From Lytechinus pictus (lineage: Eukaryota), in NCBI RefSeq assembly GCF_037042905.1, contig NC_087258.1:13454001-13518000 (forward strand): a stretch of DNA of 64,000 nt. The letters run 5' to 3'. Below, piece after piece: positions 50,827 to 62,923 of the stretch (position 1 is its first letter; each line of letters begins with the position of its first letter). Position numbers and translations under genes: made by a program. The notes under the pieces are model-generated. The model made no database searches. It saw only the letters and a program-made list of their open reading frames with translations, and was not told the DNA's origin.

Positions 50827-50928
50827 TTACTGTGTAAAGTCGCTCCTGATACGGCCTGTGCTTATTCTTGCTAACATGCTGTATGGGTAGGGTAGGGCTA
50901 CAGCACTGGCCTCATTCAGCCGCTTCAT
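50827..50928 (-). CDS. Aldo-keto reductase alternative terminal exon G2 (distal)
   Basis: ttttttcttgtcatcag|ATG...TAA, 102 nt. Encodes MKRLNEASAVALPYPYSMLARISTGRIRSDFTQ*. Confidence 0.85.
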   Translation of the reverse strand: MKRLNEASAVALPYPYSMLARISTGRIRSDFTQ

Positions 50929-51119
50929 CTGATGACAAGAAAAAACACATACAAATAAAACCAAAAAAACAAAAAACATTAATACTTGAATAATTCATCT
51001 CAGCTTGGTATTGAAGAAGATATATTTGAAATGTTTTTACAGGTATTCTTTGTAGGAAATGAGATGTGCTGATTGATTGTTTCATCCAATAATACAAATT
51101 ATTGAAGAAATATTGATAG

Positions 51120-51290
51120 NNNNNNNNNNNNNNNNNNNNNNNNNNNNNNNNNNNNNNNNNNNNNNNNNNNNNNNNNNNNNNNNNNNNNNNNNNNNNNNNN
51201 NNNNNNNNNNNNNNNNNNNNNNNNNNNNNNNNNNNNNNNNNNNNNNNNNNNNNNNNNNNNNNNNNNNNNNNNNNNNNNNNNNNNNNNNNN
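51120..51290. other. Assembly gap (171 N)
   Basis: N run flanked on both sides by a similar ~45-bp sequence. Confidence 0.99.
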
Positions 51291-51640
51291 AATTGTTTAA
51301 TCCAATGATACAAACTATTGAAGAAATATTGATAGATGGATGGATGGATGAATGAATGAGTGAATGATAAATGAATGAATGAATGATTAGACGAAAGAAT
51401 GATATTCCAGGTTTGGTGGGAGAAAGTTGCCATCTCCCCCCCCCCACCACCACAAAATACACTTTTTAATCAAATTCAATGGATGTTAGGATGGAATTTG
51501 CCTTCATTGTGGCCATGCATCTTCACGAAAGTATCCCAGAATAAAACGATGACTCTATTATAAATTTTACAGAATTTATGAGGACTATGCTCATCCACAC
51601 CTGTGTATGATATGTGTAATATGAAACCCATCCATGTGCA

Positions 51641-51742
51641 TTACTGTGTACAATCGGTCCTGGGACGGTCCTTGCCTACTTTAGCTATTGTGCAGTAAGG
51701 ATATGGATGCGAAACAGCGCTAGCCTTATTTAGCCGTTTCAT
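51641..51742 (-). CDS. Aldo-keto reductase alternative terminal exon G1 (proximal)
   Basis: gatag|ATG...TAA, 102 nt, phase 0 after exon F. Encodes MKRLNKASAVSHPYPYCTIAKVGKDRPRTDCTQ*; ATTAAA on the - strand near 51465-51470. Confidence 0.8.
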   Translation of the reverse strand: MKRLNKASAVSHPYPYCTIAKVGKDRPRTDCTQ

Positions 51743-52985: not shown

Positions 52986-53141
52986 TGAGTCTTCCAATAC
53001 AACACCCTAATCCTTCATTGGCCTCTCATCCTAATCCCTTTACATTGAAAGCACCCAAATACATAATACCCCCATCGTCCCCTCCCCCTCTTTAGGTCAA
53101 TATATTATGTTGTAACCCTAAATTGGTATTCTACAAAGTAC

Positions 53142-53281
53142 CTGTTGGTCAGTAAGTTCCCATCCTGCGGAAGCACCCATGTTGTTGTTGAGCTGGTCTA
53201 ATGTCTTCACTCCGATGATGACGGAGCACACAGCTTCTTTCTGTAGCAGCCATCGTAGGGCCACTTGGCTGACAGTCTTAC
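53142..53281 (-). CDS. Aldo-keto reductase exon F
   Basis: ttgtag|GT...CAG|gtactt, 140 nt. Encodes (G)KTVSQVALRWLLQKEAVCSVIIGVKTLDQLNNNMGASAGWELTDQQ (QVALxW and cofactor-binding region). Confidence 0.93.
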
Positions 53282-54531
53282 CTACAAACCAGAATGATTA
53301 AAACTCAATGACTTTATGTTAAATTAGACTAATGAATATAACTTTTCAAATAAAATTTTTCATATTTTTTTTTCTTTGTTAAACCAAATAATAAACGGTG
53401 AAATGTGTAGAGCAAAATAGACATCAGACAACTGAGACAACAAAAATCAGTGAATTTAAATTCAAATTAGACTCTTTAATCAAAATGCTTTTCAACTTTT
53501 TATGGAAAACCAAAGTCAATGAATGCTACTTTTCAAAAACAATTTTTTTTTGCAATTTCTTTTTGTTCATCGGTTAAACAAAATGCACTCTTCATTAATC
53601 ATTTCACAAGGTACATGGTCCACTATAGGTAGTAATACACGCTTGTAGGCATCATTCATTTGTGTATATATGTCAGCAATAATTAATATAGAATATATTA
53701 ATAGAACGTCACTGTAGAAGGATATTAATAATTTTGATGGATGTGCAATGAAATGGTCTAAAGTATAAGCAGGATTATCAAATGCATGGAATGGAGAGAA
53801 ATCAAAACTATATTTGTGGCAAAATGGGTAGCTTGCAGTGGCAGGAATATTAATTTCTCAAAATGCATATGATCTGGGAAGGAACAGTTAAAGCCATGAG
53901 CATTGCAAAAATGGGCCAAGTTTAAACTTTTGAAGTTAACAAACGTCAAATTGTTTCAGTTCTTGAGAACAAAGCAGAACAGATGGACAGACTCCCATCC
54001 TTAAAAAAAAAAATTTATCAGATTTTTACAAAAAAGACACAATATCACAAGGGGGTTGTAAATTGCTCTCCTCATACTTTGTTTTTATACAGAGAATTTT
54101 AAACTTCAAGGTCATTCCAGATGATTCCGGTGGATTCATGAGGATTAAGGACCTCTCAAATTATGCTTCAGTAGAGTGTTTTATAAAAGGAACCCCTTGA
54201 TTCGACCAGCATGAGCTTGAATTAGGACTTTCTGTGCATACACAAAGTAAACCTCCAGATCGGGATGATCTTATTGTGCATGTGTTAGAAATGAGTTTTG
54301 TGAGACGTATATCTATCAGATATGATTATTTACGTCTGGGACCGACCTCTGACGTCACCATCCGAAAGACATGACCAGGGCTTGAACCTCGAACATGTAC
54401 ATCAATTTGTTACTTCCCCACATAGCTTGGAATACAGGCACATGCCACATCGTCAAGTTTAAATTAAATTAAATCTAATCTCTTATAGGGGTCCTATTGG
54501 ATGGTTGTGACTCTATTAGGGTTCAACCTAC

Positions 54532-54707
54532 CAGCCTCCTCCGCTATCGACTGCATCACGTCCAAGAGATTCCAAACTTTCTCTTCTTGAGCAAACTTCG
54601 AGAAGCTTGGCTGGCTCTCACTTTTGACCTCCCCTTTGGCTTCCATGAAAGCGACTCTGCTGCCCTCTGGGGGCGAATCACGTTTAATCTTACCCGTCAA
54701 CCACCCC
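54532..54707 (-). CDS. Aldo-keto reductase alternative exon E2 (mutually exclusive with E1)
   Basis: Long pyrimidine tract, cccag|G...G|gtaggt, 176 nt. Encodes GWLTGKIKRDSPPEGSRVAFMEAKGEVKSESQPSFSKFAQEEKVWNLLDVMQSIAEEA(G); same length and phase as E1. Confidence 0.9.
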
Positions 54708-55204
54708 CTGGGTGTCATGGGAGGGAAGGGAAAAAGGAGGATAAGGAAAATGAATAGACAAATGAATGGGCAAAGTAGACCTTGCTGCTGTTACTGGTGT
54801 GTGAATGGAGTGCAGGGGTGTTTCATGGTGTTTGGCTCAAACTTTTGCATTTTTAGCTGGCACTCATCTGCGTATTGCCCGAATACAGAAAATGCAGTCA
54901 AATCCAACAAAACACAATGAAACAAGCATATAGGAGGTCAAAACTAATGCTTTGCATTCTAGCCCACTTATTTGCTAGTTTGGCTGGCTAATGCAGCAAC
55001 AGCAGCTACAAATAATGCAAAGGTGTGAGCCGGGCCTAAAGCTATTTGTAAAGTAATGCATAACCTTGTGACCAAATGAAAATGAGACAGCCCAAGTGTA
55101 AATGATTTTTTTTTAATAAAGTGTGACCATATTTATAATAATTTACATTAAATTGTAACAAGAATGTACATTGAATTGATTGTTAGCAACAAGAATGCTA
55201 TCTA

Positions 55205-55617
55205 CAGACCTGCCAACCTTCTACAACAAAAAAAGTATTCTTAGAAGGAAAAAAAGTATTTTTTGACAAAAAGAGTATTTTTAAAAATTTATCTCAACAT
55301 AACAACCAGCCTGTTGTAGTGAGATCAGTGAAAAAACATGTGAAATGACTCTACTTGAAAACTTGATGACTCACCATTTTAAACATGTGCTCATAGGCAA
55401 GAATTTACTTGTTCTTTTCATGCAACAAGTTACTGGCCCGACACAGATTTTCACTGGTCTGGGACTGTCGCACCGGAGCTAGTCTCGCATGCTGTGTATA
55501 TTACATACCCCATGATCGGAAATTTAAAAAAAAGTATATCATACAAAAAAGTATTGGCGTATTCATAGCAAAAAAAGAGGAATAAATACTCTAAAAAGGG
55601 AACGGTTGGCATGTTTG
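55205..55617. mobile_element. TIR MITE
   Basis: cagacctgccaacc...ggttggcatgtttg ends, aaaaagtatt subrepeats, tatcta on both flanks. Confidence 0.6.
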
Positions 55618-56087
55618 TATCTAATATGAACTTTATTTACCTTTACATGATGTGACTAACAAGAAAGAATGAATGAGGTTCTCATTTGGATTTTTATTAT
55701 TCTAGTTATTCACAAAGTCATACATAACTTTACCAAGCAGTTTCAATGAAACAAATCCTGGAGTGATTCACAAAAAATATGTGTGACTTTGTGACAAGTT
55801 GCTCTTCGATTCATATTTGCGGCCAGTATATGATGCAACACAAAGGACAGATGTAGGTGTGCATGACTGCATAGTCATTTGTGAAGTTATGCATTGAATA
55901 CTCATCCTAGGGTTCTCCACAAAATCATATGTGACTTTGTGACAAATAAAATCCCTAGTTGCATGATGGACATGTATATAACGCATCACCGGAATGATCA
56001 GATAATGATCAATGGGTGTGCGCTACTGTGTAGTCATCAATGATGTCAAGTACACATTAAGGCATGATCTCTTTGTGGAACACCTCA

Positions 56088-56351
56088 GGGCTCCGTCTTA
56101 TAAATAGCTGAGATTGATCCGATCAACCACAGCTATGGATAGCCAACATTCTCAACACCTAAAATTCATGGTTTTTTTTTCTGGATATGCTGTATATTCA
56201 TACATCCATTGTTTTATTAAGAAATTAGTGTGTTTTCCCTGGTTTACAATTGATATTGTACAAATTTCCTTTGGAAAAAAATTGACATTGATGGATTTCC
56301 ATAGAGTTAAGGTCAATCGGATCAATCGTAACCCTCTGTAAGATGGGCCCT
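56088..56351. mobile_element. MITE, same family as 5386-5656
   Basis: Same TIRs, interior in the opposite orientation. Confidence 0.7.
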
Positions 56352-57367
56352 AAGTCCTGTAACACAACGGTTATCGATAAATCATATGCTTCATTTTCAT
56401 GATTAAGTATACTTTGTAGTCAATGTAATCAATCATTAAAAAAGTGCAGTACGATGATTGCTAAAGCTTTGTGTTATAGGCCTCAGGTGTATTTAACTGC
56501 ACATATACTGCAAAGTTTAGTCTACAAGAATGACAAAGTTTCTGCATTAGGCTTTTTTTATGAATTGCTTAATGGGAATTATTGCAGTTTGAATAATTTT
56601 CACATTGTTACTGCAACAGGGCTTTGCATCTAAATAGTTTAAAAGTTAAAGGGGGGGGGGGGCTGGGGCGATTTTGCCCCAAAGTGCTCAAGAGAGCACT
56701 GGAAACTAAAAAGGAGCCCTGGAAAATCCCCATTCATCGCATGTTGCAGATTTAGGCAGTAATTTGTGAAAAGTAGCCCCTAAAAATAAAAATTAACTTT
56801 TTTGCCTGTTACATGTACAAAGATGAGCATCCAAGTTGAACTGGTCTGAGCTTGCACCGAATTCATGTAATATTCGAAATGTCACTCAAATGACAAAACA
56901 CTGAATATACAACATACTTTTATCTATACCAAATCATAGAGATAGATTGACATTAGGCCTAGGAGTAATAGGACTAGATCTAGTGGAAGTCTTGACTCTT
57001 TAGGCTGACTCATTTTTCTCACCTTTTTTGTGTCTGAATCTGATCCAATATACCGGTAACTGTAGGAATGACGCACATGCAAAGGATCCAAATCATCCCA
57101 GGAAATCACCAAGTCGAAAGCAGGATTTGAAAAACTAACTAAGACTCTAACTTTCAGCTCCACAATGCAAAATCCGAATCGAATCCTCTTAACCGAATGC
57201 TATCTTAAAATGCTATCTGTTCTGGAATCTATTCCACAACCGAACCGCTTACTTGAGCATGCAACATACGTCAATTGCATGGCTTGTACGTGTAACTGTG
57301 CAAAAGCCGACCCTCGTGCATGTCATGTGACCAACAATTATTCATTCATTAAGGTGTCTAGGCATTC

Positions 57368-57562
57368 TAATAATAATAATAGGCATTTATATAGCGCCAT
57401 CTATCTAGAAATCTTCTATTCCGAGGTGCACAAGAAAAGAAAGTATGAGAGAGTTTGGAAGAGTGTCAAAGTGCCAATATCTCATACTGTTAGAAAAGAT
57501 AAGACTTTGGTTTAGATTTGAAGGTCTCCAGTGATGATATAATTCTTTAATTCAACAGCAAA
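57368..57562 (-). mobile_element. L2/CR1-type LINE 3' fragment
   Basis: The - strand carries a degenerate ORF2 C-terminus (...SSLETFKSKPKSYLF) followed by gcgctatataaatgcc and a (TTA)n tail. Confidence 0.55.
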
Positions 57563-57896
57563 TTATTGAGTTCTATGTGATGTATGATTAATGCAGGAAA
57601 TGGATGTCAATCACGGGGGATAGACAAATAATATACAATCCTATCCAGGTTTGTCAGATGGCATCATAGCTATTTTTTTCCTATTGAAATGTTTGCAATT
57701 GAGAAGCATTTGGCAATGATATGATGATCTACAGCAAAGCTTTGAAAAAAGTGTGATTGGTATGTACATCTAAAGGGGCATTCAAAAAAATTATTGAATA
57801 AAGTACATTTGAAACAAGCATGTGGAAGAGGTAGCCATGAGGATTAATATGCAAAATAAAATAAATGCCTGGTCAAGTGTGCATGTACATCCAATC

Positions 57897-58271
57897 GGTA
57901 AATTACCAATTTGTCTACTGCCACCTCATCCACTCACCAAGCTTCATTTAGTCTATTGCCCTTTCATCCATCAACATTTTGTCTTACAACCATTTGGTCC
58001 AATCATCACTTGGTCTGATCACCAGTTCGTATATATCCATTTTGTCTTAACCAGTTGGTCTATATCTATTTATTTTCATTCATTTTGTCCAATTAGACCG
58101 AATGGTATACGGACTAAATGGCTATTAGACCAACTGGTTATTAGACGACATGGTGAGTGGACGAAATGGCAATTAGACCATGTGGATATTAGACGAACTG
58201 ATGGTAGACTAAATGATAGTAGACGAGTTGGCAATCGGACGATTTGGCATTAAACCGATTGAAAATAAATC
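57897..58271. mobile_element. Foldback MITE, same family as 1312-1718
   Basis: Collinear similarity, e.g. cattttcattcattttg and ggactaaatggctatt. Confidence 0.7.
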
Positions 58272-58404
58272 AAAATCTCATCATCTTATACCGGCTTATA
58301 AATTTTTGTAAGCTAGCTTAGATGATTTTCTTAGATTTTCTCAAGCCCCCCCCCCCCCCCCACATAAAATGAATGCAAATAATAATACACAGCTTTGCTA
58401 TTAC

Positions 58405-58580
58405 CTTGATCATTTGCGATTGATTTCATTATGTCTAGTAGATTCCAGACTCTTTCTTCCCCCACAAATTCTGAAAAGGTTGGATGGCTTTCCCTAGCAA
58501 TGTATCGTCTGGTCTCAACGAATGCCACCCTACTCCCCTCCGGTGGGGAGTCTCGAGTCATTTTGCCCGTTAGCCAACCA
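58405..58580 (-). CDS. Aldo-keto reductase alternative exon E1 (mutually exclusive with E2)
   Basis: tgcag|T...G|gtaata, 176 nt. Encodes GWLTGKMTRDSPPEGSRVAFVETRRYIARESHPTFSEFVGEERVWNLLDIMKSIANDQ(G); in phase with exons D and F. Confidence 0.88.
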
Positions 58581-59135
58581 CTGCATTGTCAAGTGCAAAT
58601 AGCAAACCCATTTTCACAAATGCTAATGTTCGTTTTTAGCCAATCAGGCACCTATATAAGGGGCCGATTCGTCCCAACTGGAGAGTTTGTAGAAAGAAAC
58701 TTTATTCTTATTTGAAATATTGAAGAATTAAGTGACTTTTTTTTTACTTGATGAAGGCAAATACTTTATTCATAATGTAGGTTCACCTGATTGCCATCAC
58801 CAACTACAGTATTTGAGCATTTCTTTAATAAATGTAGAACCAGTTTCAAAGTGCACACCTCATCATCAGGCAGAAATTCATACAGACAATCATACAGAGT
58901 TGGTACATTTCTGCCTGATTTTTTCTTCAAGCTATTATGTCTTGTTCCTTTCATAAAATAATAGTATTATCATAAACCACTATATAAGACAAGCTACGAA
59001 ATTGATTTTTACTTTAATTTATGGTAATCAACATCAATATTGCAAAAGTAAAAAGTAGAATTGAAAAAAAGAATGATTTCCCTCACTTATCACTATATCA
59101 TTTTAGCAATGATATTGTTGGGGAAGCAGACTTAC

Positions 59136-59233
59136 CCTTTGAGCGGACTCCAGGGAAGAATACCAAGGGCTTCATTCTTACAGCAATCTACCAACTCCCA
59201 TTCCAACTCTCGATTTAAGAGACTGTACTGTGC
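59136..59233 (-). CDS. Aldo-keto reductase exon D
   Basis: ctag|GCA...AAA GG|gtaagt, 98 nt. Encodes [32 protein letters not shown](G). Confidence 0.93.
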
Positions 59234-59681
59234 CTAGAGAGACAGATAGACAGGCAGACAGGGCAGGGGGATAGAAGGGGAGGAAGGGAGGGAGGGAGAT
59301 GGAGAGGGATGGAGGGAGGAGCAGAGAAGGAAGGGGACATAGGACATAAGAGCAAGGGGGCAGCCCAGGAAGGTGGAGGAAAGGGAAAAATTATCATGAA
59401 AGACTTAAAATTTACACATAGGACAACATCCTTTATCTATCCACCACATGTTAGAAGTCTGTACTGAACCTATTCAGACATAAAAAGGAAGAGAACATCA
59501 TATTCAAACTTTCATTCAATTTTTTTTCATTCCACTATTTTGGTTTTGAATACTTATCTTTGAGTTTAGGATGAGAAAGAGCATTTGGGAAATGAGATAA
59601 ATCTACTATCAATAAAGGTGGTCCTTTCATACAGGTTGAGCTCAAAGACGGTTTGACTGATATTACATTACATCACTTTAC

Positions 59682-59855
59682 CTGTAGTGTTATCCATCGG
59701 TTAAACCCCTTGTACTGACATAAATCCATGATCTTCTGCATCTGCCATCCGGTCACGTTGCTGGCCCCGACATAGCGGATCTTACCGGCCCTCACTAGGT
59801 CATCCAGGGTACGCATGGTCTCCTCAATGGGCGTGGCTGGGTCCCAAGCATGAAT
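59682..59855 (-). CDS. Aldo-keto reductase exon C
   Basis: atcag|ATT...CAG|gtaaag, 174 nt. Encodes [58 protein letters not shown] (catalytic His; GKIRYVGxSN motif). Confidence 0.95.
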
Positions 59856-61694: not shown

Positions 61695-61848
61695 CTGGTA
61701 CAGATCAATGTAATCAGTCCGCAGCCTTTTCAGACTTTCTTCTAAGCTCCACACAATGTTCTTACGGCTCAGTCCTCCACTGTTTGGATTGCTTGGATCC
61801 ATTTCAAAGCGGACTTTGGTAGCCAAAACAAAGTCTTCCCTCTTTCTC
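61695..61848 (-). CDS. Aldo-keto reductase exon B
   Basis: ttacag|G...CAG|gttaga; phase matches exon A. Encodes [51 protein letters not shown] (catalytic Lys in ATK; [13 protein letters not shown] motif). Confidence 0.95.
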
Positions 61849-62762: not shown

Positions 62763-62777
62763 TATACTAGTGCTTAC

Positions 62778-62923
62778 TTTGCCAACCAGTTTCCCACTAT
62801 AGATTCAGAGACGCCCATCACATAGACATTAGCAGTGTCTATGAAGTTCCCTCCAAGCTCTGAAAATCGGTCCAAGATCTTATGAGCTGCTTCTTCATCA
62901 CACTGCCCTGGTCTGGTTGGATC
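62778..62923 (-). CDS. Aldo-keto reductase exon A (first exon visible in the window)
   Basis: ttttag|GAT...GCA AA|gtaagc. Encodes [48 protein letters not shown], including the AKR GxNFIDTAxVY motif with the catalytic Asp and Tyr. Confidence 0.93.

What the first reader, a model, noticed from the sequence alone, without database searches (positions are those of the whole stretch)
54532..58580. Mutually exclusive exon pair E1/E2, both apparently under purifying selection
E1 and E2 share 37/58 residues by my count. Conserved residues are mostly encoded by different synonymous codons (cta/ttg, ggc/ggt, cga/cgt, gac/gat, tcc/tcg, agt/agc, agg/aga, gtg/gtc), which suggests an old duplication with both copies constrained. 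176 is not a multiple of 3, so including both or neither frameshifts the mRNA and could enforce exclusivity through NMD. Differences concentrate in one stretch (VETRRYIARESH vs MEAKGEVKSESQ). E2 has a strong pyrimidine tract and E1 a weak one, suggesting E1 is the regulated exon.
Basis: partly seen in the sequence, partly recalled or inferred. Interest (0 to 1): 0.8.

Follow-up and report, generated by a model that had tools for sequence, protein, structure and literature searches.

The report
Alternative loop-B exons in urchin reductase
A sea-urchin aldo-keto reductase gene carries two tandem copies of one 176-base exon that are spliced in one at a time, giving two enzyme versions with a different cofactor-binding loop; it is a real but ordinary mutually exclusive exon pair, and public gene models already show both versions.

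Summary
The gene lies on the minus strand. It is a YajO/Tas-like aldo-keto reductase (AKR) of Lytechinus pictus. E1 (58405-58580) and E2 (54532-54707) are each 176 nt, in the same phase, with AG/GT splice sites. They share 37/58 residues.

RefSeq already lists both forms in three species: L. pictus isoform X1 uses E2 and X2 uses E1, and L. variegatus and S. purpuratus have the same pair. Diadema setosum has a single E exon.

RNA contigs and raw reads show D-E2 joints that skip E1, and E2-F joints. E1 appears in fewer runs, in contigs that stop exactly at its predicted splice sites. Its own joints were not displayed.

Both copies are under purifying selection between Lytechinus and Strongylocentrotus: dN/dS is 0.14 for E1 (p about 1e-6) and 0.28 for E2 (p about 0.002), against 0.06 for the constitutive exons. 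Including both exons gives ...QGGG*, and skipping both gives ...PLKG*, so only single inclusion keeps the frame.

The exon encodes AKR loop B, the coenzyme lid, plus the following helices. I found no conserved docking or selector RNA.

This is a new, undescribed member of a well-known kind, and interest is modest.

The parts
58405..58580 (-). Exon E1 (upstream copy, 176 nt). It encodes AKR residues 221-278 of isoform X2. It is the minor, sample-restricted form.
   Evidence: The frame is open and the splice sites are canonical. It is 100% identical to L. pictus XP_063965446 isoform X2. Run X1 contigs end at 58580 and at 58401, which is the donor plus the 4 nt GTAA shared with the start of exon F. 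dN/dS is 0.14.
54532..54707 (-). Exon E2 (downstream copy, 176 nt). It encodes the same residues in isoform X1. It is the major, default form.
   Evidence: It is 100% identical to XP_063965444 isoform X1. Joints 54707->59136 and 53281->54532 are present in X1, X14 and X11 (8 and 13 reads in X11). dN/dS is 0.28.
59136..59233 (-). Constitutive exon D (98 nt, ...LPWSPLK + GG). It is the upstream splice partner of E1 or E2.
   Evidence: Sequence and splice sites; tblastn mapping; the D-E2 joint.
53142..53281 (-). Constitutive exon F (140 nt, begins GT AAG...). It is the downstream splice partner.
   Evidence: Sequence; the E2-F joint; mapping.
54708..58404 (-). The 3.7-kb intron between E1 and E2. 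It is rich in repeats, and no element in it is conserved with Strongylocentrotus.
   Evidence: blastn between species finds only the exons and their immediate flanks. Repeat-like depth in RNA runs. Inverted repeats are not conserved.
50830..51742 (-). Second duplicated pair of the same gene: last exons G1 (51644-51742) and G2 (50830-50928), which encode the C-terminal loop C. The pair is found only in Lytechinus, and the annotated isoforms use G2.

Best explanation
E1 and E2 are a tandemly duplicated exon of a single-copy YajO/Tas-like aldo-keto reductase gene of Lytechinus pictus, and they are spliced in a mutually exclusive way. Exon D joins either E1 or E2, and the chosen exon joins F. E2 has the stronger pyrimidine tract and is the default. 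E1 is included in a subset of samples.

Because each exon is 176 nt (3n+2), including both puts a stop at the 4th codon of E2, and skipping both puts a stop at the 2nd codon of F. Both stops lie well upstream of the last exon junction. Only single-inclusion mRNAs can therefore make the enzyme. The aberrant forms are expected to be removed by NMD; this step is inferred, not shown.

The exon encodes loop B (the beta7-H1 loop that closes over the NAD(P)H coenzyme) and the following helices. The coenzyme-contact residues (GWLTGK with Lys226, PEGSR with Arg237) are kept in both copies. The middle of the loop differs (VETRRYIARESH, net +1, versus MEAKGEVKSESQ, net -1). The gene therefore most likely makes two isozymes that differ in coenzyme binding and release kinetics, or in the shape of the active-site lid. 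This functional step is also inferred.

The duplication predates the Lytechinus/Strongylocentrotus split. It is not seen in Diadema.
For: Gene model and family: the exons were mapped by tblastn. Homologues carry Pfam PF00248. PDB hits are DepB 8HWN at 2e-90 and 7UTF at 4e-88. The catalytic D58, Y63, K89 and H131 are invariant in a 70-sequence alignment.

Isoforms: L. pictus X1 (E2) and X2 (E1), L. variegatus X1 and X2, and S. purpuratus X2 and X1 differ only at residues 224-278.

RNA: the D-E2 joint that skips E1 and the E2-F joint are seen in contigs of X1 and X14 and in X11 raw reads. E1 contigs in X1 end at the exact exon edges. E1 has zero depth in X14 and X11. E1 words are held by fewer RNA runs than E2 words.

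Selection: omega is 0.14 for E1, 0.28 for E2 and 0.063 for the constitutive exons.

Orthology and age: the E1 clade has 95/97 support. The pair lies in the same order in three genomes, and Diadema has a single E exon.

Frame.

Loop B assignment: from the alignment to DepB, the DepB structure paper (PMC9427786, read), and an AlphaFold2 model with pLDDT 93, where confidence dips to 79-86 across residues 231-260.
Against: The E1 joints themselves (D-E1, E1-F) were not in the displayed part of the joint table; 29 lower-depth joints were not shown. E1 splicing therefore rests on contig ends at exon edges and on RefSeq models.

In organism B run X3, E1 occurs together with unspliced pieces of the D-E1 intron, so that run does not prove mature E1 mRNA.

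NMD was not tested. No biochemical data exist for either isoform. Exclusivity at the level of splice choice, as opposed to removal of the wrong products, is not demonstrated.
Confidence: 0.85

Rival explanations
1. E1 is a relic or splicing-noise exon. Only E2 makes functional protein, and E1 inclusion is rare and unselected.
For: E1 is absent from X14 and from the raw-read run X11. It is held by fewer runs than E2 and has a weaker pyrimidine tract. In X3 it co-occurs with unspliced intron.
Against: E1 dN/dS is 0.14, lower than E2's, with p about 1e-6 against neutrality. Its exact length, phase and both splice sites are kept in Lytechinus and Strongylocentrotus. By contrast, the real relics in S. 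purpuratus (an E1-like fragment and the D-like copies) carry frameshifts and stops.
Confidence: 0.07
2. Exclusivity is set at splice choice by competing RNA base-pairing (a docking site with selector sequences), as in insect Dscam, 14-3-3 or MRP. The frame/NMD filter is only a backstop.
For: The E1-E2 intron is long (3.7 kb), so steric hindrance is excluded. All sites are U2-type GT-AG, so spliceosome incompatibility is excluded. Short stretches downstream of the E2 donor are conserved across genera.
Against: No intronic block beyond about 7-25 nt next to the exons is conserved between Lytechinus and Strongylocentrotus. The inverted repeats in the L. pictus introns are low-complexity or repeat-derived. 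The G16/C12 pair is absent in L. variegatus.
Confidence: 0.1
3. The pair is an assembly or haplotype artefact, or belongs to two adjacent gene copies rather than to one gene.
For: Sea-urchin assemblies are highly heterozygous. S. purpuratus also has a second, truncated model (LOC587705) with an E2-type exon.
Against: Only the E exon (and, separately, the last exon) is duplicated in the window; all other exons are single. The same order D-E1-E2-F is found in three independent assemblies. The copies are saturated at synonymous sites, so they are not alleles. A transcript joint runs from D across E1 to E2.
Confidence: 0.01

Closest known systems
Mutually exclusive exon pairs from tandem exon duplication whose length is not a multiple of three (for example vertebrate PKM exons 9/10, FGFR2 IIIb/IIIc, tropomyosin). 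This comparison rests on my own knowledge.
   Same: Two adjacent homologous exons of equal length and phase. One is included per mRNA. Double inclusion or double skipping shifts the frame. The variable part changes a functional surface of the protein.
   Different: The host gene is an AKR enzyme of echinoids. No regulators are known, and NMD dependence is untested. No paper describing this pair was found in two full-text searches.
RefSeq models '1-deoxyxylulose-5-phosphate synthase YajO-like' isoforms X1 and X2 of L. pictus (XP_063965444/5 and XP_063965446), L. variegatus (XP_041479809 and XP_041479810) and S. purpuratus LOC100889047 (XP_030842690 and XP_030842691)
   Same: These are the very products of E2 and E1 inclusion. 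The L. pictus models are 100% identical to the window exons.
   Different: They are automatic predictions. Nothing in them says that the exons are paralogous, exclusive or under selection.
Bacterial DepB (AKR18-type, PDB 7UTF and 8HWN), E. coli Tas, Kv-beta2 (AKR6A2)
   Same: The same fold and catalytic tetrad. The E exon aligns to loop B with its coenzyme-binding Lys (DepB Lys-217 corresponds to Lys226 here).
   Different: About 45-50% identity at most. The substrates of the urchin enzyme are unknown. The urchin loop B is 5 residues longer in the variable stretch.

Membership tests
Mutually exclusive exon (MXE) cluster arisen by tandem exon duplication | Adjacent exons that are homologous, with the same length and reading phase | tested here: met
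   176 nt each, same phase, 37/58 residues identical, E about 1e-24.
Mutually exclusive exon (MXE) cluster arisen by tandem exon duplication | Transcripts contain one exon or the other | tested here: met
   D-E2-F joints that skip E1. E1 contigs end at the exon edges. E1-only and E2-only RefSeq isoforms exist in three species. The E1 joints themselves were not displayed.
Mutually exclusive exon (MXE) cluster arisen by tandem exon duplication | Transcripts with both exons or with neither are absent or non-productive | tested here: inconclusive
   Both-in gives QGGG* and both-out gives PLKG*, so these forms are non-productive by sequence. No E1-E2 or D-F joint appears among the 15 joints listed, but 29 were not shown. 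NMD was not tested.
Mutually exclusive exon (MXE) cluster arisen by tandem exon duplication | Both copies maintained by selection | tested here: met
   omega is 0.14 (E1) and 0.28 (E2), both significantly below 1.
MXE controlled by docking/selector RNA pairing | Conserved complementary intronic sequences | tested here: not met
   No conserved intronic block between Lytechinus and Strongylocentrotus. The inverted repeats are not conserved. Very short pairings cannot be excluded.
Aldo-keto reductase superfamily (Pfam PF00248) | (alpha/beta)8 barrel with the catalytic tetrad Asp-Tyr-Lys-His | tested here: met
   PF00248 on the products. PDB AKR hits down to 2e-90. D58, Y63, K89 and H131 are invariant. 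The AF2 model has pLDDT 93 and alternating strand/helix elements.
Aldo-keto reductase superfamily (Pfam PF00248) | NAD(P)H-dependent carbonyl reduction | not testable with these tools
   This needs an enzyme assay.

The most novel reading that the evidence does not exclude
The loop-B swap (E1/E2) changes coenzyme preference or release rate. In Lytechinus a second, independent swap affects the substrate-contacting, domain-swapped C-terminal loop C (G1/G2). One gene would then encode up to four AKR isozymes with different coenzyme and substrate properties, deployed by tissue or stage. The locus also appears to be a hotspot for new exons, given the decayed D and E copies in S. purpuratus.
Probability: 0.3. 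Interest if true: 0.45.

Novelty: new member of a known kind. Interest (0 to 1): 0.3.

Why it matters
This is a clean, conserved case of an enzyme's coenzyme lid being swapped by alternative splicing. The conservation spans the whole time since Lytechinus and Strongylocentrotus split, about 50 million years by commonly cited dates (my own knowledge). The two isoforms form a natural pair for asking how AKR loop B tunes coenzyme binding and turnover. The neighbouring relic exons in S. purpuratus show the birth and death of duplicated exons at one locus. It does not change any general picture, because MXE pairs of this kind are well known and the isoforms are already in RefSeq.

Tried and rejected
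(1) The search for homologous proteins with the 58-aa E1 peptide and with P0187 restricted to residues 221-278 found nothing. The length window and the 90% clustering hide the E1 isoforms, so no E1 orthologues beyond the three species were obtained.

(2) The whole-library phmmer search with E1 gave only an E2-type fragment of a strongylocentrotid (P0002, locus L001) and distant AKRs.

(3) The look-up of encoding contigs for the E1 isoforms P0187 and P0186 found no record. Only one product per gene is stored.

(4) Isoforms of homologous AKR genes in oysters, Lingula and Ptychodera were checked for the same MXE. They differ at the N-terminus or are paralogues, not at the E segment.

(5) Rfam found nothing in 53000-59400.

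(6) NG86 pS of about 1.0 between E1 and E2 looked like 'more different than random'. A codon-usage simulation showed it is ordinary saturation.

(7) The placement of the Diadema exon relative to E1 and E2 is unresolved on a 58-residue tree. 'Duplication after the Diadema split' therefore rests on finding a single copy in that locus. Loss of a second copy in Diadema is not excluded.
Full report
WHAT IS THERE

The region lies in an intron-rich animal gene on the minus strand. Translating the minus strand of 58405-58580 and 54532-54707 gives one open frame each:
- E1: GWLTGKMTRDSPPEGSRVAFVETRRYIARESHPTFSEFVGEERVWNLLDIMKSIANDQ
- E2: GWLTGKIKRDSPPEGSRVAFMEAKGEVKSESQPSFSKFAQEEKVWNLLDVMQSIAEEA

The two share 37/58 residues and 111/176 bases. 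Among the 37 conserved residues, 12 codons are identical and 25 are synonymous but different; 21 codons are non-synonymous.

Mapping with a homologous full-length protein and reading the sequence gives this minus-strand gene model:
- upstream exons at about 62777-62905, 61695-61841 and 59682-59855
- D, 59136-59233
- E1, 58405-58580
- E2, 54532-54707
- F, 53142-53281
- two alternative last exons, G1 51644-51742 and G2 50830-50928

Every exon other than E and G is single in the window. Both E copies have AG acceptors and GT donors. D ends with GG, and the first base of E (T in E1, G in E2) completes a Gly codon.

IDENTITY

The protein is an aldo-keto reductase.
- The best solved relatives are DepB (8HWN, 2e-90; 7UTF, 4e-88), followed by Tas, Kv-beta2 and others.
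- Homologues carry PF00248.
- The catalytic Asp58, Tyr63, Lys89 and His131 are invariant in a 70-sequence alignment.

A profile search seeded with the window's exon peptides (alignment A1; search) and cluster look-ups showed that the window is Lytechinus pictus.
- XP_063965444 (isoform X1) matches all window exons at 100% with E2.
- XP_063965446 (isoform X2) matches at 100% with E1.
- L. variegatus (X1 uses E2, X2 uses E1) and S. purpuratus LOC100889047 (X2 uses E2, X1 uses E1) have the same two isoforms. They differ only in residues 224-278.

The pair is therefore already present in automatic public annotation. Two full-text searches found no paper describing it.

TRANSCRIPTS

Sampled 31-mers of E2 are held completely by four RNA-type runs of organism A and about half held by at least ten runs of organism B. 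E1 words are held by two runs of organism A (0.85 and 0.46) and weakly by three runs of organism B.

It showed the following.
- The joint 54707->59136 (D to E2, skipping E1) and the joint 53281->54532 (E2 to F) are present in contigs of X1 and X14. In the raw ribo-depleted reads of X11 they have 8 and 13 reads.
- E1 has no depth in X14 or X11.
- In X1, three contigs cover E1 and stop at 58580 (the acceptor) and at 58401 although the records continue. Position 58401 is the donor (58405) plus four bases. The E1 intron begins GTAAT and exon F begins GTAAG, so a four-base overhang is what an E1-F junction predicts. The E2 piece shows the analogous three-base overhang (GTA).
- The E1 joints themselves were not among the 15 displayed; 29 with lower depth were hidden.
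- In X3 (organism B), E1 is present together with unspliced pieces of the D-E1 intron and without E2. That run does not prove mature E1 mRNA.

Overall, E2 is the default exon and E1 is a sample-restricted alternative. This fits the pyrimidine tracts (0.83 against 0.61, with the same ranking in the other two species).

EVOLUTION

Genomic loci were fetched for S. purpuratus (L003), L. variegatus (L004) and Diadema setosum (L005).
- The order D-E1-E2-F is found in both Lytechinus species and in S. purpuratus. E2 there is 173 nt, one codon shorter, in the same phase.
- Diadema has one recognisable E exon, even at a permissive threshold.
- The three E1 exons form a clade with 95/97 support. The position of the Diadema exon is unresolved.

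Nei-Gojobori estimates:

| Comparison | dN | dS | omega | Fisher p |
|---|---|---|---|---|
| E1, L. pictus vs S. purpuratus | 0.102 | 0.743 | 0.14 | 9e-7 |
| E2, L. pictus vs S. purpuratus | 0.163 | 0.576 | 0.28 | 0.002 |
| Five constitutive exons together | 0.044 | 0.705 | 0.063 | not computed |

Both alternative exons are thus under purifying selection, though more relaxed than the rest of the gene. E1, the rarer exon, is the more constrained of the two.

Between E1 and E2, synonymous sites are saturated: 9 of 34 degenerate conserved residues share a codon, against 12.5 +/- 2.7 expected by chance.

Assuming constant protein rates, the E1-E2 dN of 0.24 is about 1.8 times the summed orthologous dN. 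This suggests a duplication roughly twice as old as the Lytechinus/Strongylocentrotus split. It is a rough inference.

HOW EXCLUSIVITY WORKS

D-E1-E2-F reads ...ANDQGGG* and D-F reads ...PLKG*. Both stops lie more than 100 nt upstream of the last exon junction, so such mRNAs cannot make the enzyme and are expected NMD targets. This is inferred from the general NMD rule and was not tested.

Other mechanisms:
- Steric hindrance is excluded, because the intron is 3.7 kb.
- U2/U12 incompatibility is excluded, because all sites are GT-AG.
- Competing RNA structures have no support. Between Lytechinus and Strongylocentrotus only the exons and 4-25 nt of their flanks align, although a manual alignment shows patchy similarity for about 60 nt downstream of the E2 donor. 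The inverted repeats in the L. pictus introns are low-complexity or repeat-derived. A G16/C12 pair is absent in L. variegatus.

WHAT THE SWAP DOES (INFERRED)

The E exon aligns to DepB residues that the DepB structure paper calls loop B. This is the beta7-H1 loop; it orders on coenzyme binding and carries Lys-217, which binds the 2'-phosphate of NADP+. DepB Lys-217 corresponds to Lys226 in GWLTGK here (PMC9427786).

An AlphaFold2 model of the E1 isoform (pLDDT 93.2) shows residues 225-254 as a loop with short helices and lower confidence, followed by a long helix at 262-278.

The coenzyme-contact motifs are identical in E1 and E2. Nine of the 21 differences fall in residues 241-252, where the net charge goes from +1 to -1. 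The most likely effect is a change in coenzyme affinity or release, or in the lid over the active site. The last-exon pair G1/G2 encodes loop C, which in DepB reaches into the partner's active site. That pair is the subject of another note of this scan.

VERDICT

This is a real, conserved and selected mutually exclusive exon pair. The kind is well known and the isoforms are already in RefSeq, so interest is modest.

Noticed in passing
L003:9115-9770 and L003:10769-10842 (S. purpuratus orthologous locus): Upstream of the functional exon D there are at least five decayed D-like copies with stops. Between D and E1 there is a truncated, frame-shifted E1-like pseudo-exon whose 25-nt upstream flank also matches the L. 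pictus E1 flank. The locus seems prone to tandem exon duplication, and most copies die.
   Followed up: partly
window 51644-51742 (G1) and 50830-50928 (G2), minus strand: Duplicated last exons, both ending ...TQ + TAA and both with AG acceptors. The pair is present in L. pictus and L. variegatus only; S. purpuratus and Diadema have one last exon. G1 is 32/33 identical between the two Lytechinus species. All RefSeq isoforms retrieved use G2. The single S. purpuratus exon looks like a G2-type first half followed by a G1-type second half.
   Followed up: partly
window 54222-54440: A repeat about 100-300 nt downstream of the E2 donor has very high, strongly strand-biased depth in all four RNA runs (about 800x in X11). 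Most reads are only 90-95% alike, so they come from other copies of an abundantly transcribed SINE-like family. No Rfam match.
   Followed up: partly
window 58345-58368 and 56646-56669: In the pre-mRNA, a G16 run 40 nt downstream of the E1 donor is complementary to a C12 run 1.7 kb further into the E1-E2 intron. The G run is absent in L. variegatus, so the pairing is probably incidental.
   Followed up: yes
window 54561-54589 (inside E2): A 29-nt purine-rich stretch (AAGTTTGCTCAAGAAGAGAAAGTTTGGAA) is identical in L. pictus, L. variegatus, S. purpuratus and a second strongylocentrotid, synonymous sites included. It could be an exonic splicing enhancer. The run is not clearly beyond chance for an exon this conserved.
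   Followed up: no
window 54495-54531 (intron after E2); P0188, P0189: Older or parallel RefSeq models (L. pictus XP_054768292, 290 aa; S. purpuratus LOC587705, 315 aa) read through the E2 donor into the intron (GRLNPNRVTTIQ*). Patchy similarity for about 60 nt downstream of the E2 donor is shared between genera. This may be an intron-retention or early-termination product, or a model artefact.
   Followed up: no
window 51120-51290: An assembly gap (171 N) lies between G1 and G2. It was left as it is.
   Followed up: no
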